IMG/VR virus record: IMGVR_UViG_3300005253_001115
Location: 1 to 64,000 of that record
Direction: 5' to 3' (one strand)
Length of the DNA: 64,000 nucleotides
In this document: positions 21,857-40,051 of the stretch, piece by piece
How the letters are laid out: each line of letters begins with the position of its first letter
How positions within the stretch are numbered: position 1 is the first letter of the stretch
The notes under the pieces: generated by a model
What the model saw: only the letters and a program-made list of their open reading frames with translations
What the model was told of the DNA's origin: nothing
Database searches by the model: none
Made by a program: the position numbers and the translations under genes

Positions 21857-21973
21857 TACAGCCAGGAAGAGTGACAGAGCGGCTATTGTGCCTGTTTCGA
21901 AAACAGTGGCCTGGGCGAGAGCCCAGCGGGGGTTCGAGTCCTCCCTCTTCCGGTACTTCTACCTTCTGCCATA
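21839..21973 (+). repeat. 20-bp direct repeat of the tRNA-Ser(TGA) 3' end (21839-21858 / 21954-21973)
   Basis: tacttctaccttctgccata occurs twice. Confidence 0.9.
21865..21952 (+). tRNA. tRNA-Ser(CGA), no encoded CCA
   Basis: TT-CGA-AA, long variable arm, G73. Confidence 0.88.
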
Positions 21974-25905: not shown

Positions 25906-26267
25906 GTGGAGAAACCAAGGAAGACAAGTTTGACCGACTATTCCGACATGCCGACGCGATGTTCGATCGGGCGGAAAAGATGTTCGCGAATTTTCCGTGG
26001 AGCAAGCCGCCCAGCAACGACGGCTTCTTCACTAGAACCGTAACATACGTGCCCCTTGAGGATGAAGAGGAAGTCGAGCCCTGCAACGACCCCAGCGAGT
26101 ACAAGTTGGTCAAGACACCAACAGCCTTCGAGAGCAAGGAAGCCATCGAAGAGTGGCTGAACGGTTTCGGTGCAGAGGGCTGGGACCTGAACTGTTTCGA
26201 GTTCGGGTATGCGATCTTTTCACGGTACGTGGAGGACGAGGACGAGGATGAAGCGGAGGTGGAATGA
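25902..26267 (+). CDS. hypothetical protein
   Basis: ATGA overlap; EEWLNGFGAEGWDL segment. Confidence 0.65.
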   Translation: MSGETKEDKFDRLFRHADAMFDRAEKMFANFPWSKPPSNDGFFTRTVTYVPLEDEEEVEPCNDPSEYKLVKTPTAFESKEAIEEWLNGFGAEGWDLNCFEFGYAIFSRYVEDEDEDEAEVE

Positions 26268-26581
26268 CCACTGTAATTCATATTCGAGACACCCCGCCGG
26301 GATACAAGGACAACCCGGACTACGTGTACATCGGACGCCCCAGCAAGTGGGGTAATCCTTACCCGGTGAGCATGGGTCGGACCGCCTGTATTGATCTGTT
26401 TCGAGAGCATGTGACTTCCGATCCACGGTTGCTGGAGGCTCTCTCCGAACTACGGGGAAAGACCCTGGTCTGCTATTGTAAGCCCCAGGCTTGTCACGGG
26501 GATGTGCTAGCTGAACTGGCTGATGCCAAGCAGAAGGAGGACGAAGATGAAGCGGAAGAATCAGAGTCCGAGGGAGTATAG
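26264..26581 (+). CDS. DUF4326-like protein
   Basis: VYIGRPSKWGNPY...LRGKTLVCYCKPQACHGDVL. Confidence 0.85.
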   Translation: MTTVIHIRDTPPGYKDNPDYVYIGRPSKWGNPYPVSMGRTACIDLFREHVTSDPRLLEALSELRGKTLVCYCKPQACHGDVLAELADAKQKEDEDEAEESESEGV

Positions 26582-26855
26582 TCTACAGCATTGCAAGGAT
26601 CGTGCGCGCGAGCGTTACGCTTTCGAGCTTCTGGACAACGACTACGACGTTCTATGTAACTCTGTTAGGGAAGAGTTGGTGGGCGACTGCTTTATAGGCG
26701 GGATCTCTAGGTTGAAAAAGGTCAACCAAGAGGGTTCGCAATACACCTTTATCGTGGTCCTAAGGGGCAGAGAACTGGTTGTGGTATTTGACGCTGGGCG
26801 CTCATTAGTTACCACTCTTTTGCCGCCGGAGCAGTTTTCTGAGCATTTGAGCTAA
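26547..26855 (+). CDS. hypothetical protein
   Basis: HCKDRARERY...LVTTL, weakly RelE-like. Confidence 0.6.
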   Translation: MKRKNQSPREYSLQHCKDRARERYAFELLDNDYDVLCNSVREELVGDCFIGGISRLKKVNQEGSQYTFIVVLRGRELVVVFDAGRSLVTTLLPPEQFSEHLS

Positions 26856-26879
26856 AGACTTCGGCCGAGAGACCGATAG
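26853..26879 (+). promoter_or_regulatory. sigma28-like promoter, leaderless to ATG 26887
   Basis: TAAA-N15-ACCGATAG. Confidence 0.55.
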
Positions 26880-26886
26880 ATAAGGT

Positions 26887-27339
26887 ATGAGTAGTGGAGC
26901 AGAACACAATAGAGGAGCCCTAGTTGCCGGTGGGTTAGTCATGCTTGCCTGTGTAGTAACAGGAGTTGCGTTTGATCCTAGATTAGGTACTATTGCCGCA
27001 GTATCGTTTCTGTTTGGCGTTTTCATGTTGAGCCCGGATCTGGATCTACGGAACAGTTCCCCAACTAAGCGCTGGGGTCCTCTTCGACTCTTATGGCGAT
27101 TCTACTCTAAAACACATGCACACAGAGGCATTAGCCATAGTATGCTCTTTGGCACTTTGGAGCGTGTCCTGTACATGTCTTCCGTTCTTCTGCTGATTGG
27201 CTATTGCTGGCACGGGTTCAACGTAGAATTTTTCAGCGATGTGCAAGTAATGGCGCAAGCATATCCATTAGAAATGCTTACCTCGTTCACAGGCATGTGG
27301 GTAGCAAATACAGTACACATCGTACAAGACGGGATGTAA
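26887..27339 (+). CDS. DUF2227-like metal-binding membrane protein
   Basis: LSPDLD, RWGPLRLLW and HRGISH motifs. Confidence 0.8.
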   Translation: MSSGAEHNRGALVAGGLVMLACVVTGVAFDPRLGTIAAVSFLFGVFMLSPDLDLRNSSPTKRWGPLRLLWRFYSKTHAHRGISHSMLFGTLERVLYMSSVLLLIGYCWHGFNVEFFSDVQVMAQAYPLEMLTSFTGMWVANTVHIVQDGM

Positions 27340-27470
27340 ATGATGGACAACATTGAAACACTCAAAGTAGATCTCCGTTGGCAGCTTTCCTTCGAAGAAA
27401 TTGACTGGGACTATTTCATGGAAACCGTAGAAAGGGCTAGGGCTGCTCAACAGGCGCTACTGGATCAGCA

Positions 27471-27695
27471 ATGAGCAAAGGATATCGGAAAATATCCGTC
27501 GGTGGTGTGAATTACGAGTATAAGGTAGGGCGCGCTCACGTAGACATCAGACCCCCTGGGGGGGCACGCATGACGCCGGACTTACGCCAGGTGACGGGGC
27601 TTACCTGGGACGAAATCGAGCGCGGGACGTGGAAGCGGTATTTCAGCGTCACGCCGCAACAAATTAGAGAGTACATTGAAGGAAGACAGACATGA
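27471..27695 (+). CDS. hypothetical protein
   Basis: 74 aa, overlapping starts/stops. Confidence 0.6.
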   Translation: MSKGYRKISVGGVNYEYKVGRAHVDIRPPGGARMTPDLRQVTGLTWDEIERGTWKRYFSVTPQQIREYIEGRQT

Positions 27696-28042
27696 GCAAA
27701 CCCAGTAGCAAACCTCTGGTTCGATGCACAGGGAAAGAGTGCTCCATTCACTGCCCACACAGCCTACCACATGAAAAGTGGGGCGAACTGAAGACATGTA
27801 CTCTCTGGGGAGAATGTTCAGAGAGTGAGAAAAAGATTCGTTGCGTGAAAGTGAAAGAAGGAGAACACGATGAATGACCGAAACTGTGCGGTCCGAGAGA
27901 GAATCGGAGACGGCGTTTCAGTTGGGCGCTGCTGGATTTACACAGACGAGGCTGAGGGTACTCTGACGTGCCCCAGACACGGAGATGTAACAAGTATTCA
28001 GAAGCGCTTCAGCGAGACTGGGGAGCTTGGAGAAGACCCGAG

Positions 28043-29272
28043 ATGAGTGACTACGACGTATTTCAGGGTGGCGTGCCGATCAAGGCATGGACGAAGGGCG
28101 TGCCGATTGAGTCGGCGGCTCTCGATCAGTTGAAGAATGTGGCGGCTCTGCCGTTCATTCACAAGTGGGTAGCAGTGATGCCGGACGTTCACTTCGGGCG
28201 TGGTGCTACCGTTGGCTCGGTCATTCCGACCAAGGGGGCTATCATTCCGGCGGCTGTCGGTGTGGACATTGGTTGCGGCATGGTCGCCGTGCGAACGGGA
28301 CTCGTGTCTCACGACCTTCCGACCAACTTGAAGAAGTGGCGTCTAGCTATCGAAGAGGCTGTGCCGCACGGCGCAGTCAAGGGTGCTTCCCACGATCGTG
28401 GCGGATTCTCTCCGGGCGCTCTTCCGAAGACGAACTCTCGTCTGTGGCAGAACAAGTTGGCGAATCGTTACGCTACCATTATGGGAAAGCACAAGTCGGT
28501 TGCTCACAAGGCTGGTCCACACCAGCTTGGTACGCTTGGGGGCGGTAACCACTTCATCGAGATTTGCCTGGATGAGGCGGATCGCGTGTGGCTGATGCTG
28601 CACTCGGGTAGCCGTGGCCTTGGCAACAAGATCGGAATGTACTTCACCGATCTGGCAAAGAAGGAGATGAAGATTCACTTCGTGAACTTGCCGGACAAGG
28701 ATCTTGCATATCTGCCGGAGGGTACGCAGCACTTCGATGACTACATCGAGGCGATGACGTGGGCGCAGGACTTTGCTCAGTTCAACCGCGACCTTATGGT
28801 TCTTCAGGTGTTCGATGCCTTGAAGCGCGAGGGCGGAGTTCCGCAGAAGAAGCTCTTGACTCACGATGTGGCAGTCAATTGCCATCACAATTACAGCGCT
28901 CGCGAGAACCACTACGGACAGAACGTGTGGCTCACTCGTAAGGGAGCAGTGTGCGCGCGCAAGGGCGTCATGGGAATCATCCCGGGTTCGATGGGTACCA
29001 AGTCCTTCATTGTAGAGGGCAAGGGTAACCCGGAGAGCTTTGACTCGTGCTCGCACGGGGCTGGTCGCATCATGAGCCGCTCGAAGGCAAAGAAGACGTT
29101 CACGCTGGACGACCACATCAAGGCAACGGAGGGGGTCGAGTGTCGCAAGGACGAAGGAGTCATTGATGAGACGCCGGGAGCTTATAAGGATATCGACGCT
29201 GTTATGGCAGCGCAGGCATCTTTGGTGGACATCAAGCATACGCTTCGTCAGGTGCTCTGTGTCAAGGGCTAA
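28043..29272 (+). CDS. rtcB: RtcB RNA 3'-phosphate/5'-OH ligase
   Basis: MPDVH, VGVDIGCG, GTLGGGNHF, HSGSRG, HHNY, SHGAGR and DETPGAYK motifs. Confidence 0.97.
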   Translation: MSDYDVFQGGVPIKAWTKGVPIESAALDQLKNVAALPFIHKWVAVMPDVHFGRGATVGSVIPTKGAIIPAAVGVDIGCGMVAVRTGLVSHDLPTNLKKWRLAIEEAVPHGAVKGASHDRGGFSPGALPKTNSRLWQNKLANRYATIMGKHKSVAHKAGPHQLGTLGGGNHFIEICLDEADRVWLMLHSGSRGLGNKIGMYFTDLAKKEMKIHFVNLPDKDLAYLPEGTQHFDDYIEAMTWAQDFAQFNRDLMVLQVFDALKREGGVPQKKLLTHDVAVNCHHNYSARENHYGQNVWLTRKGAVCARKGVMGIIPGSMGTKSFIVEGKGNPESFDSCSHGAGRIMSRSKAKKTFTLDDHIKATEGVECRKDEGVIDETPGAYKDIDAVMAAQASLVDIKHTLRQVLCVKG

Positions 29273-29410
29273 TCTGGTTGCCGTAAAGAGGCAAGATAAG
29301 AATGGAAAGATGGTAACCAAGTGGGTTCGACCTGAAGGTGTAAATCCGCCTTCTTAGTCCAACACACATGGCGGCTACAAAGTTGCTTCTGGGGTAGGAA
29401 AGGGAACACA

Positions 29411-29674
29411 ATGTCGCAGCAGGAACATGACGCTAGAGTCAGAGATCGCCTTTCTTGGCGCTTTATCCAACACAAGGAAGACGCCTGCCCCAAATGTCAC
29501 GGAGCAGGGGTTCGTATGTATCCCAATACTGCAACATGGGACAATAGACCTGGAATGGTATCTGGCCAAGCATTCACAGGAGATGTTTGTGACAAGTGTT
29601 GGGGAAGTGGGGATAAATATCGCCCTTGGCCCTCGCATCGAGAATTCAGAGAATTGAAAGAAGCAAATGGCTAG
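29411..29674 (+). CDS. DnaJ-like zinc-finger protein
   Basis: CPKCHGAG / CDKCWGSG. Confidence 0.65.
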   Translation: MSQQEHDARVRDRLSWRFIQHKEDACPKCHGAGVRMYPNTATWDNRPGMVSGQAFTGDVCDKCWGSGDKYRPWPSHREFRELKEANG

Positions 29675-29761
29675 TCCCGCAACGTGGAAAGATTACGCGC
29701 TGGGGTTTGGCCTCATCATGCTTATGCTAGGATTTACGGCAGGCTTCATAGTAGGTGTGAC

Positions 29762-29998
29762 ATGGCACTAGGAGATGAACTTCACTACGAGATCTGCCCG
29801 ATGCTGTTCGATTATCGCATCATCAAGACCGACGGATACATTGTCACAGACAATTGGTTATACGACGATCTTGATGATGCGGTCACGGCCTTAGTGCAGA
29901 TGGAAGAAGGCAAGGAACCAGAGGGCTGGTTCCGCCATATCGAGACTGGGCGGCGTCGCCCCGGTGGGAATGCGTCCAAGGAGTACATAAACCCGTGA
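29762..29998 (+). CDS. hypothetical protein
   Basis: AGGTG RBS; EPEGWFRH. Confidence 0.6.
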   Translation: MALGDELHYEICPMLFDYRIIKTDGYIVTDNWLYDDLDDAVTALVQMEEGKEPEGWFRHIETGRRRPGGNASKEYINP

Positions 29999-30375
29999 GC
30001 CATTCAGGCATGAGCCATTACATTGTATGCGCACATTGCGGCAAGACCTACAATACCCATGATTCGTGGCAGGCTGGCGACCACGAGAACGAAGCATGTA
30101 CCGCTGTCCAGCACGGTTTTTGCGATACCTGCGGAGGTAATGGAGCACTACACATAGCCGAAACCGGAGAGGCAGTCCACACAGATCAGACAGAGTGCAT
30201 CAGGTTTCTAACGGAGCAGGTTAAATACATGGAGCAGTACCGCCTTGAGCACGACACGAGGTATTGCGAACTGGAGAAAGCTGTGGAGGGTTTGGTCAAT
30301 GGCCGCAAGGCTGCCTTGGCGGAATCCCGGACACTAAAGGCAATACGAAACTCCGATGCCGCTGTATCACGTTAA
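29995..30375 (+). CDS. hypothetical Cys/His-rich protein
   Basis: CAHC, CDTC; weak tag variant NGRKAALAESR. Confidence 0.6.
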   Translation: MSHSGMSHYIVCAHCGKTYNTHDSWQAGDHENEACTAVQHGFCDTCGGNGALHIAETGEAVHTDQTECIRFLTEQVKYMEQYRLEHDTRYCELEKAVEGLVNGRKAALAESRTLKAIRNSDAAVSR

Positions 30376-30643
30376 TGTTTCCGTCGTTGTAGGCGACCAG
30401 CATCTCACCTTTTCGAAGGTAGTAGAAGCAAAAGGTTCAGTTGCTGGTCCCATTAAGCTAACGGTGGCTAGGCTCCCGGGCGTGTATCAGCGTGAAGAAG
30501 CCCCTTCCGACATTGGGAGTTCCAGCAGGTGCTATGCAGGGCACGCAAGTGACCTTACTCTAATTCACGGAGAGGTACCAGAGCCGGAACCCATCACCGA
30601 TCGTCGAGGGGCGATTAGAGACCAGAAAGCACGCAATGGATAA
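30356..30643 (+). CDS. hypothetical protein with C-terminal RRxAIxxQKAR tag
   Basis: Ends TDRRGAIRDQKARNG. Confidence 0.7.
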   Translation: MPLYHVNVSVVVGDQHLTFSKVVEAKGSVAGPIKLTVARLPGVYQREEAPSDIGSSSRCYAGHASDLTLIHGEVPEPEPITDRRGAIRDQKARNG

Positions 30644-30938
30644 AGTGATGGAATTGAAAGCCCAGCTCTCCACCGCCGAAGCTGAGCGGGATGCTGCGCG
30701 GGAGGAGGCGGGGATGAGTGATGCAGCATTTGTAACGCTTCTGGCTGCCAGCACAAAACAAGATGATGAACTCACCAGGCTGCGCGTCCTGGTTGAGGAG
30801 CGGAAAGCAGGAACACCTCACCACCACGATCGAGACTATCCGGGTTGCAAGGTAGCTGTAGACGCTCTCTACAGGAAGCGTGACGAACTCCAAGCCACCG
30901 TCGCCGCCCATGTAAAGGCTGCGGCAGAGCTAGCCTAG
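30636..30938 (+). CDS. hypothetical coiled-coil protein
   Basis: 100 aa, overlapping start. Confidence 0.6.
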   Translation: MDKVMELKAQLSTAEAERDAAREEAGMSDAAFVTLLAASTKQDDELTRLRVLVEERKAGTPHHHDRDYPGCKVAVDALYRKRDELQATVAAHVKAAAELA

Positions 30939-30947
30939 AGAGATTCA

Positions 30948-31361
30948 ATGGGTGACGTAAAGGTAGTATTCACGAACGGCTGTTTCGACCTACTGCACGT
31001 TGGTCATATTCGGTATCTGGCTGCGGCTAAGCTACATGGGGACTGGCTCATCGTAGGGCTGAACTCGGACGAAAGTTTCCGCCGACACAAGGGCAGGAAT
31101 CCCATCAACTGTGAGCAGTGGCGCTACGAGATGCTGATGGCTTTGGGGTGTGTGGACGAGGTGCGAATCTTCGATGAAGACACGCCGGAGAGGCTTCTCT
31201 CAGAGATCGAGCCAAATATCCTAGTAAAGGGCGCAGATTACAAGCCCGAAGACGTACTCGGGCGTGAGCACGCAAAGAAGGTGCTGTGCCTGGAGGTTGG
31301 TGCGCAGGTCCATACGAGCGATCTTTTCGAGAAGATCAGAATACACTTTCAAGGAGTTTGA
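30948..31361 (+). CDS. RfaE domain II/HldC-like nucleotidyltransferase (heptose-1-phosphate adenylyltransferase family)
   Basis: FTNGCFDLLHVGH, LIVGLNSD, LVKGADY. Confidence 0.85.
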   Translation: MGDVKVVFTNGCFDLLHVGHIRYLAAAKLHGDWLIVGLNSDESFRRHKGRNPINCEQWRYEMLMALGCVDEVRIFDEDTPERLLSEIEPNILVKGADYKPEDVLGREHAKKVLCLEVGAQVHTSDLFEKIRIHFQGV

Positions 31362-31465: not shown

Positions 31466-32071
31466 CTAAGAGACCTCTGCCATGCACTGGTGGGTTCGCT
31501 TCATCCATCCGTGGAGAAACACGATCATTTCAGGCTTGTTCTTGACGAGGCGGCAGAGAAAACCTACCCGCTCCATTACGACAGCCTGGGCGACGGCGTT
31601 CTCGCCATCTTTCTCCACGGCTGAGGCAACCTTCTTCAGCGTGTTCGGCCCGATAGCACCATCGACTCCGGCTCCGACTACCTTCTGGAGTGTCTTGGCG
31701 GAGCGGCTGGTGCCAGAATTCACTGCGTAGTCCATCACGGCTAGAGCAATGGCGGGAGCTAGGTCGTCCCCGTGGATTTTGTTCCAATACTTCTCCCGGT
31801 AGATGTCCTTCGCCCCCTCTTCCGTGAGGTTCTTGATGTCTACGTCGGGGTGCGACCGCTTGGCGATGCCGAAATTCGTCTCACCTCCGGGATCGGACTC
31901 GTGATTTGTGTAGCCACCTTCCCACCGCAGAGTAAACTTCATAGCTCTTTCAAATTTGTCCATTTCAGGCTCCTCGGGTATAACCGGACGCACAGCTTGG
32001 GAAGGAACCGGCTGGGGCTTAGTGTTCCCCCGCTTGTCCAAAAAGCTCATGATCCAGTCAAAAAATCCCAT
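31466..32071 (-). CDS. endolysin, glycosyl hydrolase family 108 with peptidoglycan-binding domain
   Basis: WEGGY...DPGGETNFGI, VDGAIGPNTL, FLHGWMKR. Confidence 0.9.
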   Translation of the reverse strand: MGFFDWIMSFLDKRGNTKPQPVPSQAVRPVIPEEPEMDKFERAMKFTLRWEGGYTNHESDPGGETNFGIAKRSHPDVDIKNLTEEGAKDIYREKYWNKIHGDDLAPAIALAVMDYAVNSGTSRSAKTLQKVVGAGVDGAIGPNTLKKVASAVEKDGENAVAQAVVMERVGFLCRLVKNKPEMIVFLHGWMKRTHQCMAEVS

Positions 32072-32091: not shown

Positions 32092-35000
32092 TTAGGGTCG
32101 AGGCTCCTGCTCGTACTCGATCGGCATACCAGCGGACTGGATGAGCTGCTGAACGCGGGCGAACAGGTCGTCGGCACCGTCGTGCTCGGAGGACTTGTCC
32201 AGAGCCTCCAGACGGGGCGTGATACCAAGTAGCCACTCGGGAGGACCGTCAATCACGATTCCGCCGTGACGCTCGAACCTGTGGCTCCTGAGGGCCATAA
32301 TTGCCGGACTTACTTCCTCGAAAAGGGGGCTCATGATTACGATACGCTCCCCCACGGGACCCTTAGGATCGACCGCAATAGCCATTTTCTGGTTTGGCAT
32401 TAGCGGTTGAACCTGCTTCTGTTCGACATTTGCGTCATCGTCAGCTTGGATGGGGTCGATCGGAACTTCTCGCTCGTTTCTGTGATTCACGGATGGTCCT
32501 ATTCCCGGGCGTTCCTCTTCCAGAGGAGTGCTGTATTCCTTCGGGAAGATGGCGTCGATGTCCATCAGGTCTTCCATAGTTCGCGCCGCTTCCGTGGCTG
32601 CGGGGTAAATGTTCTCTTCGGGCTCCTCGATACTCATGAAGCCAGACTTCTTGCCTGTAAAGTCCATGTCCCAGTACGGACGGATCTTGGTGCCGCCACC
32701 ACGACCGCCTCGTCCCCGCTCTCCGTGATTCATGTCATCACCGCCCGGATTTTGTCCGCCGGGTCCATGCATGTTCGTGGGGTCGAGAGTTGAAGTAGCT
32801 TTGTCTGCATCGTCGTGGTCGTCGTAGAAATCAGGGTGCTCCACAAGATGATCCTTAGTCACCTCCTTAGCTATGCCTCTATCTACACCGTGTTCCCACA
32901 CTTCAATATCTGTGCCTGTCTTTAGCGCCTCGGGGTCGAAGGCAGAATCCGGCATGCCATCAGCCCTACCGCCAGGAAGCAGCTCTTCTTGAGCGCAAGC
33001 CTTGAACATGTTGCGCTCTGGGTCCGGGTAGTTCTGTACGGGCAGGAATCCTGTCTCTTGGTCTGCACCACGAGGCTTAATCATCGGGGCACGGTCGAGA
33101 CCGCCGCCACCTGGCTTACGAACTATCTGTCCGGGGAAGCTGGAGGGAGGGGACTCTTCGGCACTTCTAGTGGGGGACGGGTGCGGAGTGGAAGTCTCGG
33201 GCATCTGTGGCAACGGAAGCTCTACAGGCAAGAAGCCCCGGTCCTTGTTGTTGGGTGTCTCGTATGCTTCAGCAGGGTCGCCTTCCCAGTCCGGGAAGAC
33301 ACCGGTTTCTGGTGTCATGCCGTTCGGGCTGGGCTCAAGCTCCTCCATTTGGTGCGGCGTAGACCCGCCGAACCCGTCACGGCCAAGAGGCCCTTCTAGG
33401 GGATGGTTCGAGAATCTAGATCCTCGATCGAAGTCCTTGACGCCGGGATACTCTTCGGCGCGCTTGTGTAGGCGCTGGGGCTCCGCCGTGGCTAGGCCCG
33501 GATGCTGGGATTCACCCTTCTTGTCAGCGGGCCACTCGTAAAGATTCCACAAGAGGAAATCATCTTGCGTCTTGTCTGGGTCTGTTCGGAATGAGCTAGG
33601 GCCTACACCTGTGCCGAATACTCCGCTCTTGGTGTTACCCTTCTTGCGCTCTTCTCTATAGTTCCCGTCGAAGCATTCTTCACCTTCGCGGATATGCGAG
33701 TCCCCACATTCATTCATGTTCTTCTCCTGAGAACCGCCCTCCTCCGAGCGGTCCTTCAAAAAACGAGTAGCCAATTCGATCAGCTTGTCCGGGTCTGTTA
33801 TTGCTGTCTCGTCCTCAATCGAACGAGTCAGAGCCAGGAACTTGCCCATATCGGGTCCGGGCTTGAAGCCCTTCGCGATTAGGTGCTTACCCGAAACAGA
33901 GTCTACCAGCTTCCCGCCTGGGGCAGCTACAGAAGTGACATGCTGGTGGTAGTCCTCAAGGAACTTGTCCTGGGAACTTACGTCCCTGCGCAGGGCTTCC
34001 TCGGTTGTTCTGCCCAACACATCAGCCTTCGACAAGGCCGCAAGCAGCTCGGGGCTAACATCGGCATCACCCAATGTGCGACCCAGCTTCCTGTAGCCTT
34101 TGCGGCCACTGGTTCCGGGAAGGATCGCCGGGCGCAAGTGGGTATCAACTAGAGTCTCAACCTGCTTAATTAGAGCCAGTGGTGCTTTCATCCTGCCCAA
34201 GAACGCGCGAGTAGGCTCGATGCCAGCCTCTTCGTGTCCACGGGAGGTAATGTACCCGTCGATCTCCTCAGTAGAGACCGGCTTTCCAAAGTCGTGTGCC
34301 AGAGCCCCAAGCATTAGGGGGAGATCGAACGCAGGATCGCCAGTGCGCTGTTTTGCAGCCTCATCGAGAACCAGCAGGGTGTGGACGTAAACGTCCCCCT
34401 CGGGGTGCCACTTAGGTTCCTGCGGAACACCCAGTAGCGCCTCGATCTCCGGGAAGTAGCGGAGCAGGTTTGCCTGATGCAGCACCTCAATTCCCTTACT
34501 CGGTTTTTGGCCCTTTAGGAGCATCTTGGAGAACTCCGGCAGGATACGCTCACCCGGGAGCTGCTCAAGCGGCTGTGCGGCCACGAGTTGAAGTGTCTGG
34601 GGGTCTACATCAAAGTCAAAACGCGCAGCGAACTGGGCCACTCTGAGGGCTCGTAACGGGTCGTCAGAGAACGTGTTGACATCTGCGGCACGCAGGATTC
34701 CTGCCTTGAGGTCAGCGACACCGTTTAAGGGGTCAATGATCTCGTCTGTTAAAGGGTCTTTCGAAAGGGCGTTGATCGTGAGATCGCGCCTGCGGGCAGC
34801 GTCTTCCACGCTCATGGTAGGATCAGGAATTACATCAAAGCCTTTGTGCCCCTCTCCGGTCTTCTTCTCGCGGCGAGGGAGTGCAACGTCCCAGTCAAGC
34901 TCTTGGATGTTCAGCACGCCGAACTGCTGTCCGACCTCTTTTACATTACCAAACCGGGAAAGGATCTCGTTGACCTTCTCCATGGGGAGACCGAAGACCT

Positions 35001-35202
35001 CGAAGTCCACGTCTTTGCTTGGGAGGCCGAGTAGCTCATCTCGCACGATGCCCCCGACGAGCAAGGCTACCCCTCCCGCGCCTTCAACAGCGCGTGCGAA
35101 TGCCTCGACCAGAGCTTTTTCATTCGGATTCACGAGAATATTCCTGTATTTCTTCCTCATCCGCATAGCGGCTATGTGTGCGAATCCTGTGGCAATTTGC
35201 AC
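32092..35202 (-). CDS. cca: CCA tRNA nucleotidyltransferase (class II + HD domain) fused to ~550-aa acidic/Pro-rich extension
   Basis: VGGIVRD, DVDFE, RRDLTINA, DDPLRALR, HPEGDV, HDFGK. Confidence 0.9.
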   Translation of the reverse strand: MQIATGFAHIAAMRMRKKYRNILVNPNEKALVEAFARAVEGAGGVALLVGGIVRDELLGLPSKDVDFEVFGLPMEKVNEILSRFGNVKEVGQQFGVLNIQELDWDVALPRREKKTGEGHKGFDVIPDPTMSVEDAARRRDLTINALSKDPLTDEIIDPLNGVADLKAGILRAADVNTFSDDPLRALRVAQFAARFDFDVDPQTLQLVAAQPLEQLPGERILPEFSKMLLKGQKPSKGIEVLHQANLLRYFPEIEALLGVPQEPKWHPEGDVYVHTLLVLDEAAKQRTGDPAFDLPLMLGALAHDFGKPVSTEEIDGYITSRGHEEAGIEPTRAFLGRMKAPLALIKQVETLVDTHLRPAILPGTSGRKGYRKLGRTLGDADVSPELLAALSKADVLGRTTEEALRRDVSSQDKFLEDYHQHVTSVAAPGGKLVDSVSGKHLIAKGFKPGPDMGKFLALTRSIEDETAITDPDKLIELATRFLKDRSEEGGSQEKNMNECGDSHIREGEECFDGNYREERKKGNTKSGVFGTGVGPSSFRTDPDKTQDDFLLWNLYEWPADKKGESQHPGLATAEPQRLHKRAEEYPGVKDFDRGSRFSNHPLEGPLGRDGFGGSTPHQMEELEPSPNGMTPETGVFPDWEGDPAEAYETPNNKDRGFLPVELPLPQMPETSTPHPSPTRSAEESPPSSFPGQIVRKPGGGGLDRAPMIKPRGADQETGFLPVQNYPDPERNMFKACAQEELLPGGRADGMPDSAFDPEALKTGTDIEVWEHGVDRGIAKEVTKDHLVEHPDFYDDHDDADKATSTLDPTNMHGPGGQNPGGDDMNHGERGRGGRGGGTKIRPYWDMDFTGKKSGFMSIEEPEENIYPAATEAARTMEDLMDIDAIFPKEYSTPLEEERPGIGPSVNHRNEREVPIDPIQADDDANVEQKQVQPLMPNQKMAIAVDPKGPVGERIVIMSPLFEEVSPAIMALRSHRFERHGGIVIDGPPEWLLGITPRLEALDKSSEHDGADDLFARVQQLIQSAGMPIEYEQEPRP

Positions 35203-35725
35203 ATACTAATTGACATCTCTCTAACTCTTTTTGGATTACATCGTTTGTTGCACCCATGTGTATTAGCTTACTTACGCTGGTATGTCCGGGAGAATCACTG
35301 ATATTGTCAAAATCAAAAACGAAAGAAGGGAAGGTATTATTGCAATCATAGCATTTACCTCCATGCTGGAGGACTAATTTATTCTTTCGGCGCTTTGTGC
35401 GTACCCTTTCCCAGTGAGCATGGCAATAGCCTTTGGCTATATGCTTAGCAGTACAATTTGTAATGCGGCAGCCCTGCTTGCCGTCTTTTTCCTGTGTTTC
35501 TTGGTCTAATGGGGTTTCTTGTCTTAGGCGCTGATAGTGAAAAAGGCAATATCCCCGAGACCCGTGCTTTCTTTCGCACCCTTCAACAGTACATCCTTGT
35601 TTTCCGTCTGTTTTTCTTATTTCCTGGTGAAGCGGTGTTCCGCGCTCCATACGATCATAATGTAACTCACAATATCCGTGTCCGTAGTGTTTCCTCTCAC
35701 AATCACTTATTTTGCATATTCTCAT
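35120..35725 (-). CDS. HNH-like endonuclease with three Cys/His repeats
   Basis: 3x Cx4C..KH...GYCxxH; C-terminal CYDC...CQLVCANCHRIRT. Confidence 0.75.
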   Translation of the reverse strand: MRICKISDCERKHYGHGYCELHYDRMERGTPLHQEIRKTDGKQGCTVEGCERKHGSRGYCLFHYQRLRQETPLDQETQEKDGKQGCRITNCTAKHIAKGYCHAHWERVRTKRRKNKLVLQHGGKCYDCNNTFPSFVFDFDNISDSPGHTSVSKLIHMGATNDVIQKELERCQLVCANCHRIRTHSRYADEEEIQEYSRESE

Positions 35726-37479
35726 CTGCGGGGTCTCTTCAAGAATGTTGCTCTGACGAACTCAGAGTCGAGGCTACCAGAGACATTCGAATCCGCCCCT
35801 AGCTGCACGCTTGTTGCTGTAATACCTGTCATATCGGGAACCGTGGCTGCCAAGTCCTCTATCAGAGTAACGCCATCTACGGAAATTCGCAACAGCGAAC
35901 TACTCCATTCGGCGACTACCTCAGTAATTTTACCACTAACCCACGAGGTTGGCGTAGGTGTAGTAATGGTTCCGGTTGTAGCGGCATCCTGAACCAGTAA
36001 CGTAAGTGTTCCGTCTACATTTACCTTTAATGCAACACCGTTAACCAGCGTGATGGGGTCCCTGGTGTCGAAGACCCACTTAGGTTCGGTAGGTGTGGCC
36101 TCGAATCCGATCGCTAGACTGAACACGGCTGCGCCTTCCACCATATCGAAGGGCACATCTGGAGCAAACGACAGGTTGTCTGTAGCCCGAATCTCGTCAG
36201 TAAGGACCTGCGATGTGGCAAAAGGCGTGTGGGAAATGCTGGGCACGGCCAGTCGCACGGTAACATAGTCACCCTGGTTGACGCTACCGATCTCCAGACG
36301 CCAAGAGAATTTCTCGGTAGTAGCCGGGTACTCGGAAGGCTGAGCCTGGATACTGAACGGCTTCAAAGGGCGGGCATTGAATAGGTCTGCGGGATTGAGG
36401 CTGACCGACTTAGCGGGCAAAGCACGGTCAGCGAAATCGAAGAAGTTAAGGATGAGCTTGACCTCGGTGATGTCGCTGTCCGGGGCCACTTTTTCCATAC
36501 CTGCTAGCAAGGACAGGGCGATAGGCTTCGTGATGTCGAACAGGATAGGCTCTGCTAGGCCGAAGCTGGCAGTGCTGAACGGAGAGATGCTTACAGGGCT
36601 GGCACCGTTTACCTGAATGCTCCAAACATTTGCGTCAAACCCGTCTCCTTGTAGCTTCTGTACACCGCTCTTGATGATAGAGATGCCTGGAGAGTCCATG
36701 GTGTAGCTATCTGGGAAGAATCCAGTCCCACAAGGGATCGTAGAGGAGCCGGTGAACAGGTTATTTGGAAGAAGCTGAATGGAGCCTTGTTCTGTGAACG
36801 TTGATGTACCCAGCTCCCACGGAGGAGTGTCGATTGTCTGGAACGATAGAGACCCTGGTTTCGGTAACAAGCGTTCGCCACCACCAAGGTACACTAGTTG
36901 ACCAGCAAGTTGGGCATCGGACTTGATCTCTGCAAGCTTCTCGAAGTTGATGTCCGCCCACACGGAGTTCACGATAGTAGGCTCCGGGATGACTGTCTGG
37001 TTAACGCCAAGCTCGATAGGTGTGTGGGGAGAAACATCAGCATAGGGCTCATCTCGCTCCTTCTCCTTATCAAGGTGCCAGGAGCGGTTGGGTGTAGAAC
37101 CGACCACCGAAGTGCTGGGTTGGTCGGAGAATGTTCCTTGTTCCTTCATCACAGCAGTCACGCTTGTAGTTAGGCTCTGACCATCTAGATCCAGAGAGAC
37201 TCTAGCTTCAAGGTTGGTAGAAACTGCTGGGTTGATGAAGAATACTGCGAAATAACCGTCTTGGTTGGCGGCGGACTTGGTAAAGGTTACCTTCTCTAGA
37301 GCTACCTCGACCAGTCCGGTCTGCGCCGTATTGTAGACATTGAAAAGCTGCACCTCTCCCGAGATGACATCAGCAGGATGAAAGAAGTCGTCACACGGAC
37401 TGACTACGTAGACCTGTACTGTGACTACGTTGCTGTCAACGTTATGATACGCAGCGATTTTTGCTTCGAGAGTAGCCAT
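35722..37479 (-). CDS. putative virion structural protein with lectin/LamG-like C-terminus
   Basis: 585 aa, beta-rich, S/T-rich. Confidence 0.6.
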   Translation of the reverse strand: MATLEAKIAAYHNVDSNVVTVQVYVVSPCDDFFHPADVISGEVQLFNVYNTAQTGLVEVALEKVTFTKSAANQDGYFAVFFINPAVSTNLEARVSLDLDGQSLTTSVTAVMKEQGTFSDQPSTSVVGSTPNRSWHLDKEKERDEPYADVSPHTPIELGVNQTVIPEPTIVNSVWADINFEKLAEIKSDAQLAGQLVYLGGGERLLPKPGSLSFQTIDTPPWELGTSTFTEQGSIQLLPNNLFTGSSTIPCGTGFFPDSYTMDSPGISIIKSGVQKLQGDGFDANVWSIQVNGASPVSISPFSTASFGLAEPILFDITKPIALSLLAGMEKVAPDSDITEVKLILNFFDFADRALPAKSVSLNPADLFNARPLKPFSIQAQPSEYPATTEKFSWRLEIGSVNQGDYVTVRLAVPSISHTPFATSQVLTDEIRATDNLSFAPDVPFDMVEGAAVFSLAIGFEATPTEPKWVFDTRDPITLVNGVALKVNVDGTLTLLVQDAATTGTITTPTPTSWVSGKITEVVAEWSSSLLRISVDGVTLIEDLAATVPDMTGITATSVQLGADSNVSGSLDSEFVRATFLKRPRR

Positions 37480-37811: not shown

Positions 37812-38723
37812 CTATAGAATCTCGGTGGGCCATTTGCGGGAAAGCTCTGGTGTTTTGATAGCGTGGAGCGCTTTGAGCATTTTGACGGCTCTGGAGCCTA
37901 CTAGGGTAAAATCGTGAGTGGTGTTCCTGTTCACGTTCACATTAGCATGGTGCTCAGGCACCAGTTTGGTGGCTATGTCGCGTACCCACTCACAGGTCAT
38001 TCTGGTCCCTGATACTTTCCAAACGGATAAACCCTTCGTATTGTGTGTAAGGCAACCGTCTGCGTCGTACAGACCCTTCAGGTACGCTAAATTCAGGGGG
38101 TGCTCTAGGTCCGGTGGGGACAACGTGTGGCTCTTGTTGGGAACTACGTTGAACTGCTGTAGATTTTTGACCCACTGGGATGAGCTTATCGCCACAGAGT
38201 ACATCTGACCTCCTCGTGGCGCTTTGTACTCTCGTACCTTGCCTGCGAACTTTGTTACCGCCTTGAATCCGTCAATAAGCTCTCTATCCTTCAACGATAG
38301 TCGTATTACACCATTGATGACGTTTCCGTCGCCTGCGAGGAGACCTGCCCAGTAGGAATTGATGACGTTTGGGTCCTTGAAGAACTCGTCGTTTACTTTG
38401 TAGCGCCGTCCTTGATTGTTCTCGCGATTAGGGTTCTTGGCAACTAGGTCTTTGATCCACCCGTAGACAGTTGGTTTGCTTACGTCGAGCTGTACAGAAA
38501 CCTTATCTAACGAGCTTCCGTTCGAGTACAAAGCCCTGGCGGCTTCGCGTTGCGTCTCCTGCTTGGGCGTCCGTCGCGTGAGTTTAACCCGTGTCTCTGG
38601 TTCCGGCAGGTCTCTTGTCCATCTCCAAATGGTTTGCCTCAGGGTACCTGTGCGCTTGATGATCTCTTTGACTGGGATGCCTTCTGCCCACAGTTCTCTA
38701 ACTTCTGTCTTTCGCTTATCCAT
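37812..38723 (-). CDS. LAGLIDADG homing endonuclease with N-terminal HTH repeats
   Basis: YWAGLLAGDG and YLKGLYDADG. Confidence 0.88.
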   Translation of the reverse strand: MDKRKTEVRELWAEGIPVKEIIKRTGTLRQTIWRWTRDLPEPETRVKLTRRTPKQETQREAARALYSNGSSLDKVSVQLDVSKPTVYGWIKDLVAKNPNRENNQGRRYKVNDEFFKDPNVINSYWAGLLAGDGNVINGVIRLSLKDRELIDGFKAVTKFAGKVREYKAPRGGQMYSVAISSSQWVKNLQQFNVVPNKSHTLSPPDLEHPLNLAYLKGLYDADGCLTHNTKGLSVWKVSGTRMTCEWVRDIATKLVPEHHANVNVNRNTTHDFTLVGSRAVKMLKALHAIKTPELSRKWPTEIL

Positions 38724-38824: not shown

Positions 38825-40051
38825 CTATAATATGCCAATATTGGACAAAGTTTGCATTATGTCACCGCTGGAAAACGTGCCCATCGGGAAAGTGAACCGA
38901 TTCAGCGCACGGAACCCCATAGGCTTTCCAGCGAAGTTACCCACGGAACTTGTTGCACGGATGAATCCCAGCTTCGCGGGGCTAACCGAATCACTCAAGT
39001 AATCCCGGAACCTGTTGATGGCTTCAGCCAGCATCGGAGCATGGTCGTAATCTAGTGTTACCGTCTGGCCAGAGAAGGAAAACGCTAGATCCACTTCCAT
39101 GAGATACTGTGCGTTTAATCCGTACCACGCGGCAGCCAGGAGAATGAATGAGTTGAACTGAGATCCCCCAATAAACGACATTTGCCAAGCGGTGATCGGG
39201 TAGGTTACATTGACGATTTCCAGACCCCTGTCGAGATACTCAACAAGGTCGGAGTCCTCGTAAGCCTGTACACGTCCACGTTGCTTTTGGAACTTGTCGA
39301 TTAACTGGCGTAGCTGTACGGTCATATTGAGGATAGGTCCGTCAACTGACCGAATTAGTTGGAATTGCGTCTCTTCAGCAGCGGCAATGTTCTGCCGGAC
39401 GCTCCACAAAGAGACGTATGCGCAGTTGGGCGTAGACAGCACACCCGCAGGAATAGTGTAGTAGTACAGGTAGCTGTCGCCGAACTCTACCTCTTGGATC
39501 TGACCGTTGTCTAGCGTAACAATGGTAGACGTTCCTTGAGGTCCAATGGCCACGCTCTTTCCAGACGTACTGCCAAGTATCAGCTCCAAGGCCAAAGTAC
39601 CGCCGTTCGCGATGTCGATCCTCTCTGTACGCTGGATCTGTACTCGAAGCTCTCGGCTGACCAGGCTTAGGATACACTGGCTCCGGTCCTCGGAAGCCGT
39701 TACAACGATATCCTGAACATCGAATTCGTGAGTGATCTCAGCCTGCTCGTTGGTGTTCGTTACGATGAACGCCTTGAACTGATATCGGTTGTTGGGGTTA
39801 GACAACATAGCGTCATTGGCGACCGTCCACGTTGTAGCGTACTCACCTACTCCCCCGTCTGCTTGTAGAACACCAGTTTGTACAGCCACTCCGTTGGGAT
39901 CTAGAATCTCGTAGGAAGGGTACCTAAGAGGGTCCTTGGGGATGAGAGGGGTAGTTTTGGAACCGTCGGTGAAGAACCCTATACGGAATACCTGGGAAGT
40001 GCCCCGCGTTAGTAGTCGGGGGATGTCATCGGATTCACTAAGGAATGCCAT
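38825..40051 (-). CDS. putative virion structural (neck/adaptor-like) protein
   Basis: 408 aa in structural operon; function inferred from context. Confidence 0.5.
   Translation of the reverse strand: MAFLSESDDIPRLLTRGTSQVFRIGFFTDGSKTTPLIPKDPLRYPSYEILDPNGVAVQTGVLQADGGVGEYATTWTVANDAMLSNPNNRYQFKAFIVTNTNEQAEITHEFDVQDIVVTASEDRSQCILSLVSRELRVQIQRTERIDIANGGTLALELILGSTSGKSVAIGPQGTSTIVTLDNGQIQEVEFGDSYLYYYTIPAGVLSTPNCAYVSLWSVRQNIAAAEETQFQLIRSVDGPILNMTVQLRQLIDKFQKQRGRVQAYEDSDLVEYLDRGLEIVNVTYPITAWQMSFIGGSQFNSFILLAAAWYGLNAQYLMEVDLAFSFSGQTVTLDYDHAPMLAEAINRFRDYLSDSVSPAKLGFIRATSSVGNFAGKPMGFRALNRFTFPMGTFSSGDIMQTLSNIGIL

What the first reader, a model, noticed from the sequence alone, without database searches (positions are those of the whole stretch)
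32092..35202. CCA-adding enzyme with a ~550-aa disordered extension in the virion module
Seen: a complete class II NTase+HD enzyme followed by an acidic/Pro-rich tail with one compact motif (ALKTGTDIEVWEH...IAKEVTKDHLVEHPDFY, DUF5661-like from memory). It is co-oriented with structural genes rather than with the tRNAs. Inference: a head-packaged, proteolytically trimmed enzyme injected to repair tRNA 3' ends early in infection.
Basis: partly seen in the sequence, partly recalled or inferred. Interest (0 to 1): 0.62.

Follow-up and report, generated by a model that had tools for sequence, protein, structure and literature searches.

The report
tRNA-repair enzyme fused to phage carrier
An uncultured marine-sediment jumbo phage carries its only tRNA 3'-end (CCA) repair enzyme fused to a conserved, mostly unfolded phage protein that swaps enzyme modules between strains, which resembles proteins phages pack into the particle and inject, though packaging is not shown.

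Summary
The ORF is real: minus strand, 32092-35202, probable GTG start at 35133, about 1013 aa. It is uninterrupted in 12 full-length homologues and in an independent metagenome study, so it is not a missed stop. Residues ~24-480 are a complete class II CCA-adding/repair enzyme with an HD domain. The 557-aa tail is acidic, Pro/Gly-rich and mostly predicted unfolded, yet as conserved as the enzyme.

The tail is not an extension of the enzyme. Distant relatives encode the backbone alone (430 aa) or only the C-terminal domain (120 aa) at the same kind of position. The enzyme is therefore an N-terminal graft. DUF5661 (0-2 copies), Fic and coiled-coil cassettes come and go.

DUF5661 recurs in polyvalent-type proteins and in head-gene modules. 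One case is an independent CCA-DUF5661 fusion next to a portal gene. About 30 of 33 phage tRNA genes encode CCA, so the enzyme's role is repair.

Delivery through the virion is plausible but unproven. Proteolytic trimming is untested.

The parts
32092..35202 (-). Whole open frame (1036 codons from the first GTG). The probable gene is 32092-35133 (GTG start, 1013 aa). Stop codon TAA at 32092-32094.
   Evidence: The 1013-aa database call P0003 is 100% identical. The L024 homologue aligns from 35133.
34690..35064 (-). Class II nucleotidyltransferase head (PolyA_pol, residues 47-171) with GGxVRD, DxD and RRD motifs.
   Evidence: Pfam 67.5 bits. Genome search placed it at 34690-35064. Motif residues are invariant in alignment A1.
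34438..34617 (-). PolyA_pol RNA-binding neck (residues 196-255).
   Evidence: Pfam 34.5 bits, cut-off 22.
34099..34389 (-). HD phosphohydrolase domain (residues 272-368). H266, H303 and D304 are invariant.
   Evidence: Pfam 20.8 bits here and 27.9 bits in the relative P0002. Invariant columns.
33763..34098 (-). C-terminal body/tail region of the CCA enzyme (residues 369-480).
   Evidence: PHROG 2244 match runs to residue 459. 79% identity to L003 through residue ~528.
33655..33708 (-). Conserved Cys/His junction motif CGDSHIRxGEECxDGxYRE (residues 499-516). It is present in the CCA fusions and absent from the backbone-only protein P0013.
   Evidence: Alignment A1 invariants. P0013 sequence.
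33004..33654 (-). Backbone part 1 (residues 517-733). Predicted unfolded but with strongly conserved short motifs: GPSxFRTxPD, AEPQRxH, RDGFGGSTP, PGGGGLDRAPM, TGFLPVQN, NMFKA.
   Evidence: pLDDT below 50. 60-85% family identity. Alignment.
32803..33003 (-). DUF5661-type cassette (residues 734-800). It forms a helical hairpin with pLDDT ~85. Copy number is 0, 1 or 2 among relatives, and strain variants delete it in frame.
   Evidence: In-frame skips at 32809->32984 (174 nt) and 32784->33002 (net 207 nt) in run X5.
32401..32802 (-). Backbone part 2 (residues 801-934). Gly-rich GPGGQNPGG...GRGGG, then YWDMDFTGKK, ARTMEDLMDID and HRNER motifs. Predicted unfolded.
32095..32400 (-). C-terminal alpha/beta anchor domain (residues 935-1036; order b-b-a-b-a-a-b). 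It is the most conserved part of the tail and also exists as a stand-alone 120-aa protein.
   Evidence: pLDDT above 90. Alignment A4. Stand-alone version in L018. No significant fold match.
35120..35725 (-). Context: HNH homing endonuclease inserted between the 585-aa gene and the CCA gene. It has low GC and is absent in L003, L024 and L025.
   Evidence: A variant junction in run X4 is consistent with an HNH-less strain.
35722..37479 (-). Context: conserved upstream partner gene (585 aa, ConA/Laminin-G-like C-terminus). In relatives it overlaps the start of the backbone gene by 1-4 nt.
31466..32071 (-). Context: GH108 + PG_binding_3 lysin, the last gene of the minus-strand block (ATG 32071 or 31962). 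It follows the backbone gene in most relatives.
38825..40051 (-). Context: connector-like protein (408 aa, phrog_17327). Its PaBG homologue is annotated head-tail connector and is followed directly by the endolysin.

Best explanation
The gene encodes a mosaic cargo-on-carrier protein.

Shown:
- A complete class II CCA-adding/repair enzyme (NTase head, neck, HD domain) is joined in one frame to a ~530-aa backbone.
- The backbone consists of conserved but unfolded Pro/Gly/acid-rich segments carrying short linear motifs. It ends in a ~100-aa alpha/beta anchor domain.
- The backbone is the older part. It occurs without any enzyme in distant relatives, and the anchor domain occurs alone.
- In this clade the CCA enzyme was grafted onto the backbone's N-terminus. 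Small cassettes (DUF5661 x0-2, a Fic domain, a Lys/Glu coiled coil) are inserted or lost between close strains.
- The protein evolves much faster than the capsid protein.

Inferred:
- The gene is expressed late with the neck/connector block.
- The protein is incorporated into the particle through its backbone, its anchor domain or both, and leaves with the DNA.
- Once inside, the enzyme rebuilds tRNA 3'-CCA ends and removes 2',3'-cyclic phosphate ends through the HD domain. This would act on host or phage tRNAs attacked by host nucleases, before the phage's own RtcB, phosphoesterase and 33 tRNAs are made.
- The unfolded carrier would let the protein thread through the portal and tail channel.
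For: Architecture and reality of the fusion:
- document 12 full-length homologues of 981-1490 aa from different samples (8 database proteins, a further read of the 1490-aa form from L003, and ORFs in L024 and L025), not counting the window's own gene call P0003.
- An independent study's contigs cover the gene without indels.

Backbone autonomous:
- L006 has a 430-aa backbone-only gene with its own ATG, directly after the homologue of the window's 585-aa gene at 54% identity.
- L018 has a 120-aa anchor-only gene directly before a GH108 lysin.

Cassette turnover:
- Alignment A1 shows the variable inserts.
- Fic is found only in the 1490-aa form (L003/P0002 = P0008), Pfam 25.1 bits with an HPFEDGNGR motif.
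- In-frame DUF5661 deletions occur in strain variants.

Fast evolution:
- Between the two phages (G000 and G001, the L003 record) the major capsid protein is 97% identical. The CCA part is 79%, the 585-aa protein 74% and the tail 54%.

Repair rather than maturation:
- About 30 of 33 tRNA genes encode CCA.
- The fusion is the only PolyA_pol-family gene in both genomes.
- The best NCBIfam match is 'multifunctional CCA addition/repair protein'.
- An RtcB, Metallophos and CTP_transf cluster is conserved next door.

Late or virion context:
- The window and L003 show the order connector-like gene, ConA-like gene, this gene, lysin.
- L004, L024 and L025 keep the ConA-like gene, this gene and a lysin homologue; L024 also has the connector.
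- PaBG has connector followed directly by endolysin.

Packaging analogy:
- DUF5661 co-occurs with InPase, mCpol, NUDIX, 2H, GNAT, LPD1, Acb1 and transglutaminase in large proteins.
- All five informative DUF5661 contexts I examined lie in virion or packaging modules:
  1. CCA-HD-DUF5661 protein P0083 directly after the portal and five genes before the prohead protease.
  2. A DUF5661-InPase protein three genes after a portal and beside an SNF2/DdrB-ParB polyvalent protein.
  3. The Rctr197k 2039-aa protein beside a phrog_1645 virion protein.
  4. Vibrio phage VPs20 gp14, between the terminase and a DUF2184-domain gene that I take, from memory, to be the capsid gene.
  5. Synechococcus phage S-SRM01 gp206, between the small and large terminase subunits.
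- Iyer et al. 2017 (PMC5512222) argue from such contexts that these proteins are packaged and injected.
Against: - There is no direct evidence of packaging. The phage is uncultured, no RNA run holds it and no virion proteome exists.
- The window's gene is not in the head module proper. Portal, protease and capsid genes lie 13-27 kb away on the other strand.
- Members of the family without DUF5661 exist, so DUF5661 cannot be the general packaging determinant.
- The anchor domain has no recognisable fold relative (best VIA Z 5.5). No other protein in the genome shares it.
- The conserved adjacency of the anchor domain to the lysin gene could point to a lysis-linked rather than a virion-linked role.
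- A folded 50-kDa enzyme would have to unfold to pass through the tail.
- The NCBIfam equivalog cut-off is not reached (216.6 against 451 bits), so CCA specificity is inferred and not shown.
- The contexts examined for DUF5661 were few and chosen by me.
Confidence: 0.45

Rival explanations
1. The protein is not packaged. It is a late cytoplasmic tRNA-repair enzyme. Its backbone and anchor tether it to something inside the infected cell, for example the adjacent GH108 lysin or lysis machinery, assembly sites or the translation apparatus. Alternatively, the backbone protein has its own late function and the enzyme simply shares its expression.
For: - The anchor domain gene lies directly upstream of the lysin in the window, L003, L004/L005 and L018, with an ATGA overlap in L018.
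- In L024 and L025 the next ORF downstream is also a homologue of the window's lysin.
- The gene is outside the portal-to-capsid head module.
- The fusion is the phage's only CCA enzyme, so it must also serve any intracellular need.
Against: - No holin- or spanin-like membrane protein lies near the lysin, so there is no recognisable lysis cassette.
- In L008 three genes separate the backbone gene from the nearest peptidoglycan hydrolase.
- The enzyme-cassette turnover (CCA, Fic, DUF5661) and the rapid divergence are what is seen in conflict proteins delivered to the host.
- An independent CCA-DUF5661 fusion is placed between portal and protease.
Confidence: 0.3
2. The NTase-HD module is used against nucleotide-based immunity or another RNA, not for tRNA 3'-end repair. 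One option is that the HD domain hydrolyses cyclic or 2',3'-cyclic-phosphate signalling molecules. Another is that the NTase tails a host RNA.
For: - DUF5661's commonest partners act on nucleotides or nucleotide signals: mCpol, InPase, NUDIX, 2H phosphoesterases and Acb1.
- The NCBIfam equivalog threshold for Cca is not met.
Against: - All class II tRNA-NTase motifs, the RNA-binding neck and the body are conserved.
- The best family matches are CCA addition/repair enzymes.
- The genomic setting is rich in tRNA functions: 33 tRNAs and RtcB.
Confidence: 0.1
3. Artefact: a missed stop codon, a frameshift or a chimeric assembly joins a normal ~450-aa CCA gene to a downstream gene.
For: - Ordinary phage CCA enzymes are about 400-450 aa. 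The best hit in the phage collection is a 449-aa ORF.
- A backbone-only gene exists in one distant relative.
Against: - One uninterrupted frame is seen in 12 homologues from different samples and assemblers.
- The 79%-identity alignment to P0002 runs unbroken from the enzyme through the junction motif to about residue 528.
- No indels appear in contigs of an independent study at depths of 200-500.
Confidence: 0.01

Closest known systems
Bacterial and phage class II CCA-adding enzymes with an HD domain (E. coli Cca type, NCBIfam PRK10885; stand-alone phage enzymes in PHROG 2244)
   Same: The head, neck, body and HD domains and all catalytic motifs are the same. The best family matches are to these enzymes. 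Jumbo phages of several groups are known to encode such enzymes (PMC7824862).
   Different: Known phage enzymes are stand-alone and about 400-450 aa. This one carries a 557-aa conserved tail. It lies in a late block rather than beside the tRNA genes. It scores below the equivalog cut-off (216.6 against 451 bits).
Polyvalent proteins of phages and conjugative elements (Iyer, Burroughs, Anand, de Souza, Aravind 2017, PMC5512222)
   Same: Several conflict-type modules sit in one polypeptide. There is strong mosaicism between close relatives and rapid divergence. The genes are phage-encoded near virion genes. DUF5661 is shared with proteins that carry that paper's hallmark domains (InPase, LPD1, 2H, GNAT).
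   Different: None of that paper's hallmark domains is in this protein. The paper mentions neither a CCA enzyme nor Fic (0 occurrences). More than half of this protein is a conserved unfolded backbone of a family with about 11 clusters at 50% identity.
Virion-packaged, injected phage enzymes (T4 Alt, P1 DarB/DdrB, N4 virion RNA polymerase), as summarised in PMC5512222
   Same: The proposed logic is the same: an enzyme made late, carried in the particle and active at the very start of the next infection.
   Different: Those are experimentally shown to be in virions. Here packaging is only inferred. No capsid-targeting sequence or cleavage site has been identified.
P0083-type CCA-HD-DUF5661 protein (652 aa) of an uncultured phage (locus L010)
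   Same: It is a CCA enzyme (33% identical) with a DUF5661 module (49% identical). Its phage has a portal and a protease of the same PHROG families as the window's.
   Different: It has no backbone or anchor domain, and DUF5661 is C-terminal. The gene sits directly between portal and prohead protease.

Membership tests
Class II tRNA nucleotidyltransferase (CCA-adding enzyme) | PolyA_pol head domain above the Pfam gathering score, with GGxVRD, DxD and RRD motifs | tested here: met
   67.5 bits against 23. G50 G51 R54 D55, D64 D66 and R138 R139 D140 are invariant in 9 sequences.
Class II tRNA nucleotidyltransferase (CCA-adding enzyme) | RNA-binding neck (PolyA_pol_RNAbd) and (E/D)DxxR motif | tested here: met
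   34.5 bits against 22. D180 D181 P182 L183 R184 are invariant.
Multifunctional CCA addition/repair protein (E. coli Cca type) | HD phosphohydrolase domain after the NTase | tested here: inconclusive
   Pfam HD scores 20.8 bits, just under the cut-off of 22, in the window protein. It scores 27.9 bits in the relative P0002. H266, H303 and D304 are invariant.
Multifunctional CCA addition/repair protein (E. coli Cca type) | NCBIfam equivalog score (PRK10885, cut-off 451 bits) | tested here: not met
   It is the best hit, but at only 216.6 bits. The protein is a divergent relative, not an equivalog.
Class II tRNA nucleotidyltransferase (CCA-adding enzyme) | Specific addition of C, C, A to tRNA 3' ends, as opposed to A-adding or poly(A) activity | not testable with these tools
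   This needs an enzyme assay. CCA families outrank PcnB and A-adding models.
DUF5661 (PF18905) | Score above the curated cut-off of 27 bits | tested here: not met
   16.9 bits and 21.3 bits. The close relative P0007 passes with 32.4 bits.
DUF5661 (PF18905) | Reciprocal retrieval and the family's invariant residues (GG, F, L, G, ExEH, DHL, YY) | tested here: met
   phmmer with the tail finds more than 1000 proteins through residues ~734-796. Of the 139 best, 132 are PF18905 members. The consensus matches the window sequence except that the final YY reads FY.
Polyvalent proteins (Iyer et al. 2017) | Two or more conflict-type domains in one polypeptide, with mosaic architectures among relatives | tested here: met
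   NTase, HD and DUF5661 are present here. A Fic domain or a coiled coil is added in relatives, and DUF5661 occurs in 0-2 copies.
Polyvalent proteins (Iyer et al. 2017) | Presence of the hallmark domains catalogued for the class (for example LPD domains, MuF, DarB-type helicase, InPase, ART) | tested here: not met
   None was found in this protein by Pfam, PHROGs or NCBIfam. The only link is DUF5661, which co-occurs with such domains elsewhere.
Polyvalent proteins (Iyer et al. 2017) | Encoded in a virion or portal-terminase context | tested here: inconclusive
   The gene lies in a late block with a connector-like gene and a lysin. It is 13 kb from the terminase and 15 kb from the portal, on the opposite strand.
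Virion-packaged injected enzymes | Physical presence in particles and delivery into the host | not testable with these tools
   The phage is uncultured, from marine sediment metagenomes, and no RNA run holds it.
Protease-processed internal head proteins | A prohead protease in the genome and defined cleavage sites in the protein | not tested
   A protease gene is present at 54274-55014 (phrog_18299). No cleavage consensus is known for this phage group, so sites could not be sought.

The most novel reading that the evidence does not exclude
This is a previously undescribed family of virion-delivered carrier proteins in marine-sediment jumbo phages. A conserved unfolded backbone with a small anchor domain is loaded with exchangeable enzyme heads. 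Here the head is the phage's only CCA-adding/repair enzyme, and in a relative a Fic domain is added. tRNA 3'-end repair would then be injected together with the DNA as a pre-emptive counter to tRNA-targeting host defences. DUF5661 would be a general adaptor of packaged cargo proteins.
Probability: 0.35. Interest if true: 0.78.

Novelty: new variant of a known kind. Interest (0 to 1): 0.6.

Why it matters
Host defences that cut tRNAs act within minutes of infection, whereas phage repair enzymes are normally made only after infection has begun. A repair enzyme that travels in the particle would close that gap. It would also be the first tRNA-repair activity among injected phage proteins. I found no such report in the polyvalent-protein survey or in a targeted literature search.

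Some findings stand whether or not the protein is packaged:
- The family shows stepwise growth of a protein: anchor only, then backbone, then backbone plus enzyme plus cassettes.
- It contains a long 'disordered' region under purifying selection as strong as that on an enzyme.
- It gives DUF5661, a domain with more than 1000 representative clusters and no literature, a testable context: head-module and polyvalent-type proteins.

Tried and rejected
- Fold of the C-terminal domain. Foldseek against PDB and BFVD gave nothing at E <= 0.001. VIA-align wide gave a best Z of 5.5 (an S-layer protein and a 2H phosphodiesterase), inside the noise band the tool states. ESM Atlas gave TM <= 0.36. The fold is unassigned, and I make no claim that it is new.
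- Sequence searches. A profile of the tail found nothing in PDB. The 585-aa, 408-aa and 363-aa neighbours found nothing useful in PDB. tblastn of the 585-aa and 363-aa proteins against phage genomes found nothing. A protein-atlas look-up of the anchor domain gave no usable hit.
- Complex prediction of the 585-aa neighbour with the last 201 residues gave no verdict (score 0.12, mark 0.32). This is not evidence either way.
- The promoter and terminator scan of 31-45.5 kb was uninformative. Promoter-like sites were near the shuffle expectation and there were no minus-strand terminators.
- Sequencing runs held DNA only, with no RNA holder, so expression timing cannot be read.
- Literature: 'DUF5661' gives 0 papers. 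No paper reports a CCA enzyme in a virion proteome. The PaBG proteome paper lists processed virion proteins but nothing homologous.
- I considered a lysis-cassette reading because the lysin is adjacent. There is no holin- or spanin-like membrane protein nearby, so I keep it only as part of the first rival explanation.
- I considered seeking prohead-protease sites in the tail. I did not pursue it because no cleavage consensus is available for this phage group.
- Operators' notes. Read laying was given 3401 letters. No genetic code other than table 11 was used. The big protein search was used once, after the family scans left the tail open.


Full report
**What is at the coordinates**

The window is the first 64 kb of a 266,640-bp IMG/VR virus record. 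It belongs to a jumbo phage found in marine sediment metagenomes from at least two studies. Its major capsid protein is 35-37% identical to those of PaBG, BcepSauron and the Erwinia jumbo phages.

The finding's coordinates delimit one open frame on the minus strand, 32092-35202, with 1036 codons from the first GTG. The likely start is GTG 35133:
- AGGA lies 7 nt upstream.
- The database gene call with 100% identity is 1013 aa.
- Homologues begin at the same place.

The stop is TAA at 32092-32094. The next gene, a GH108/PG_binding_3 lysin, starts at ATG 32071 or 31962 and does not overlap.

**The enzyme**

- Pfam finds the PolyA_pol head (residues 47-171, 67.5 bits), the RNA-binding neck (196-255) and an HD domain (272-368, 20.8 bits against a cut-off of 22). 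PHROG 2244 'tRNA nucleotidyltransferase' covers residues 47-459 at E 4e-78.
- The class II motifs (GGxVRD, DxD, RRD, DDPLR) and the HD histidines and aspartate are invariant in nine family members.
- The best NCBIfam model is 'multifunctional CCA addition/repair protein', but at 216.6 bits against a cut-off of 451. The best solved relatives are CCA-adding enzymes. It is therefore a divergent but complete class II tRNA nucleotidyltransferase. CCA specificity is inferred.
- It is the only gene of this family in the 266-kb record (89% complete) and in the related 184-kb record.
- Ordinary phage versions are about 400-450 aa. No hit in the phage collection extends beyond query residue ~505, and the best one is a 449-aa ORF.

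**The tail**

Residues 480-1036 have net charge -46, 10.6% Pro and 10.8% Gly. An AlphaFold model built on an 18-sequence alignment gives pLDDT below 50 for 383 of 557 residues. It has two confident islands:

The unfolded blocks are not free to vary. In 25-residue windows they are 60-85% identical across the family, against 78-92% in the enzyme. They carry invariant strings such as RDGFGGSTP, PGGGGLDRAP and NMF. This is the pattern of segments that fold on binding or make many short contacts, not of a spacer.

**The fusion is real and conserved**

- A word search with the C-terminal domain found eight further proteins of 981-1490 aa besides the window's own gene call. All of them carry an N-terminal PolyA_pol domain.
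- The 1490-aa form was also read directly from the IMG/VR contig L003, and L024 and L025 hold two more full-length ORFs of 1040 and 1059 aa.
- Contigs from an independent study cover the gene at high depth with no insertion or deletion.
- A missed stop or a chimera is excluded.

**The tail is the older, autonomous part**

An exhaustive HMMER search of 1.84 billion representatives found only about 11 clusters with the backbone. Two of them are informative.

- In locus L006 a 430-aa protein starts with its own ATG, overlapping the upstream stop (TAATG). It begins at the GPSxF block, so it lacks both the enzyme and the Cys/His junction motif. The gene before it is the homologue of the window's 585-aa gene, at 54% identity.
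- In L018 a 120-aa protein consists of little more than the C-terminal domain. It is followed, with an ATGA overlap, by a GH108 lysin.

The series is therefore anchor domain alone, then backbone plus anchor, then CCA enzyme plus backbone plus anchor.

Within the last group the alignment shows exchangeable inserts:
- a Cys-containing segment plus a Lys/Glu coiled coil in three members;
- a Fic domain in the 1490-aa form only (L003; Pfam 25.1 bits, HPFEDGNGR motif);
- DUF5661 in 0, 1 or 2 copies.

Strain variants in run X5 skip 174 nt, or a net 207 nt, exactly over the window's DUF5661 cassette, in frame.

Between the window's phage and the L003 phage the capsid protein is 97% identical. The 585-aa protein is 74%, the CCA part 79% and the tail 54%. 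This accessory protein is evolving fast.

**DUF5661**

- The window's copy is below the Pfam cut-off (16.9 and 21.3 bits against 27).
- The tail nevertheless retrieves more than 1000 representative proteins through this segment alone. Of the best 139, 132 are PF18905 members. Their consensus (PGGxAD...F...L..G..VE.EH....AKEIAKDHL.E.P.YY) fits the window sequence.
- The same 139 proteins also carry mCpol (11 of them), InPase, NUDIX, 2H phosphoesterases, GNATs, LPD1, Acb1, SET and transglutaminase. Some are proteins of 850-2000 aa. These are the kinds of domain, several named in that survey, described for polyvalent proteins (PMC5512222).
- One of them, P0083 (652 aa), is an independent CCA-HD-DUF5661 fusion, 33% identical in the enzyme.

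**Genomic context**

In the window:
- The 33 tRNA genes (73-24017), RtcB (27968-29272), a metallophosphoesterase (25009-25905) and a CTP_transf-like gene (30948-31361) are on the + strand.
- The finding's gene is in a convergent minus-strand block running from 44768 to 31466. In order, the block holds a RuvC-like resolvase, four unknown genes, a connector-like protein (phrog_17327), an endonuclease, the 585-aa ConA-like protein, an HNH endonuclease, the CCA fusion and the lysin.
- Terminase, portal, prohead protease and capsid protein follow on the + strand at 47.8-62 kb.

In relatives:
- L003, L024 and L025 lack the two homing endonucleases.
- There the 585-aa gene overlaps the start of the fusion gene by 4 nt. 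A variant junction in run X4 looks the same.
- In PaBG the connector is followed directly by the endolysin. The pair of 585-aa gene and backbone gene is therefore an insertion specific to this clade, inside a late neck-to-lysin block.

DUF5661 proteins elsewhere:
- P0083 lies immediately after a portal of the same PHROG family as the window's, and five genes before a prohead protease of the same family.
- A DUF5661-InPase protein lies three genes after a portal and beside an SNF2/DdrB-ParB polyvalent protein.
- The Rctr197k 2039-aa protein (DUF7178 x3, InPase, LigT, DUF5661) lies beside a phrog_1645 virion protein.
- In the cultured Vibrio phage VPs20 the module lies inside gp14, between the terminase and a DUF2184-domain gene. 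From memory, unverified, DUF2184 marks the capsid gene in this phage group.
- In Synechococcus phage S-SRM01 it lies in gp206, between the small and large terminase subunits.
- Two further contexts (L013 and L014) were too short or uninformative.

**How it most likely works**

Shown:
- The protein is a cargo-on-carrier mosaic.
- Its enzyme head is intact.
- The phage's tRNA genes almost all encode their own CCA: 31 of 33 by an automatic count, of which one Ser gene is a doubtful overlap. The enzyme is therefore not needed for maturation and reads as a repair activity.
- It sits next to a conserved RNA-repair cluster.

Inferred, at about 0.45:
- The protein is made late and incorporated into the particle through its backbone and/or anchor.
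- It is threaded out with the DNA.
- It restores damaged tRNA 3' ends at the start of infection.

The main rival, at about 0.3, is that the protein stays in the cell and the anchor's conserved adjacency to the lysin reflects a different, late intracellular role. No membrane protein of a lysis cassette is nearby, which weakens that reading somewhat. A role of the NTase-HD module against nucleotide signals is possible but less likely. Proteolytic trimming remains untested.

**Comparison and novelty**

- The enzyme belongs to a known family.
- The architecture works like a polyvalent protein, but it carries none of that class's catalogued hallmark domains. That survey mentions neither CCA enzymes nor Fic.
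- I found no paper on DUF5661 and none on a CCA enzyme in a virion.
- I file it as a new variant of a known kind: a small, fast-evolving family in sediment jumbo phages, with an unassigned anchor domain.

**Limits**

- The phage is uncultured, and there are no expression or proteome data.
- The complex prediction gave no verdict.
- The DUF5661 contexts examined were few and chosen by me.
Their head-module role rests on gene position and on my own recollection.

Noticed in passing
window 35120-35725 (-) and 37812-38723 (-): Two homing-type endonuclease genes sit between translationally coupled late genes: an HNH endonuclease with GC 0.42-0.47, and a phrog_4645 endonuclease. Both are absent at the same places in L003, L024 and L025. 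A loose end at 35111 in run X4 reads like an HNH-less junction, with the start MRVEA... overlapping the upstream stop.
   Followed up: partly
window 73-24017 (+): There are 33 tRNA genes, all on the + strand. About 30 encode their 3'-CCA. tRNA-Phe (73-152) and one tRNA-Ser (21865-21952) do not. One call at 12392-12464 has an abnormal two-base 'anticodon'.
   Followed up: partly
window 25009-31361 (+); L004 5326-9940; L008 3552-6575: An RNA-repair-like cluster of metallophosphoesterase, RtcB and a CTP_transf-like nucleotidyltransferase converges on the end of the late block. It is conserved in relatives. L008 adds a SET-domain gene and a DUF4326 gene.
   Followed up: partly
L003 3691-8163 (protein P0002, residues ~927-993): The relative's copy carries a Fic domain whose motif reads HPFEDGNGRVGD. 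The final conserved Arg of the canonical Fic motif is replaced, which may mean an altered activity.
   Followed up: no
L025 22-2904: The homologue of the 408-aa connector-like protein is 960 aa in this phage. Residues 1-329 and 879-960 match the window's protein, with ~550 extra residues between them. The insert may be an intein or an added domain.
   Followed up: no
window 33655-33708 (-), residues 499-516: A conserved Cys/His motif (CGDSHIRxGEECxDGxY) lies at the enzyme-backbone junction. It may bind metal. NCBIfam gives only a weak 'cysteine-rich acidic repeat' hit (E 0.008). Members with the coiled-coil insert add two more Cys residues.
   Followed up: no
window 22415-23626 (+): A phrog_1645 'virion structural protein' gene lies in the middle of the tRNA array, far from the head module. 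Its homologue in Virus Rctr197k lies two genes after the DUF5661-bearing 2039-aa polyvalent protein.
   Followed up: no
window 33183-33284 (run X4) and 33836-33870 (runs X4, X5): Further strain-level variants occur inside the gene. One is a 100-nt skip over the variable DWEG...NNKDRG segment. In addition, contigs diverge on both sides of a 34-nt conserved stretch near residue 450. Several related strains appear to coexist in the same sediments.
   Followed up: no
window 57403-59985 (+): An 860-aa protein with an ATPase-like region (phrog_20988, residues 610-809) is encoded between the prohead protease and the capsid gene. That is an unusual place for an ATPase.
   Followed up: no
PF18905 control genomes: DUF5661 also matches in Deinococcus radiodurans, Haloferax volcanii and Methanosarcina acetivorans, over the cut-off in two of the three. 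The domain is therefore not confined to phage records. These may be proviral copies.
   Followed up: no
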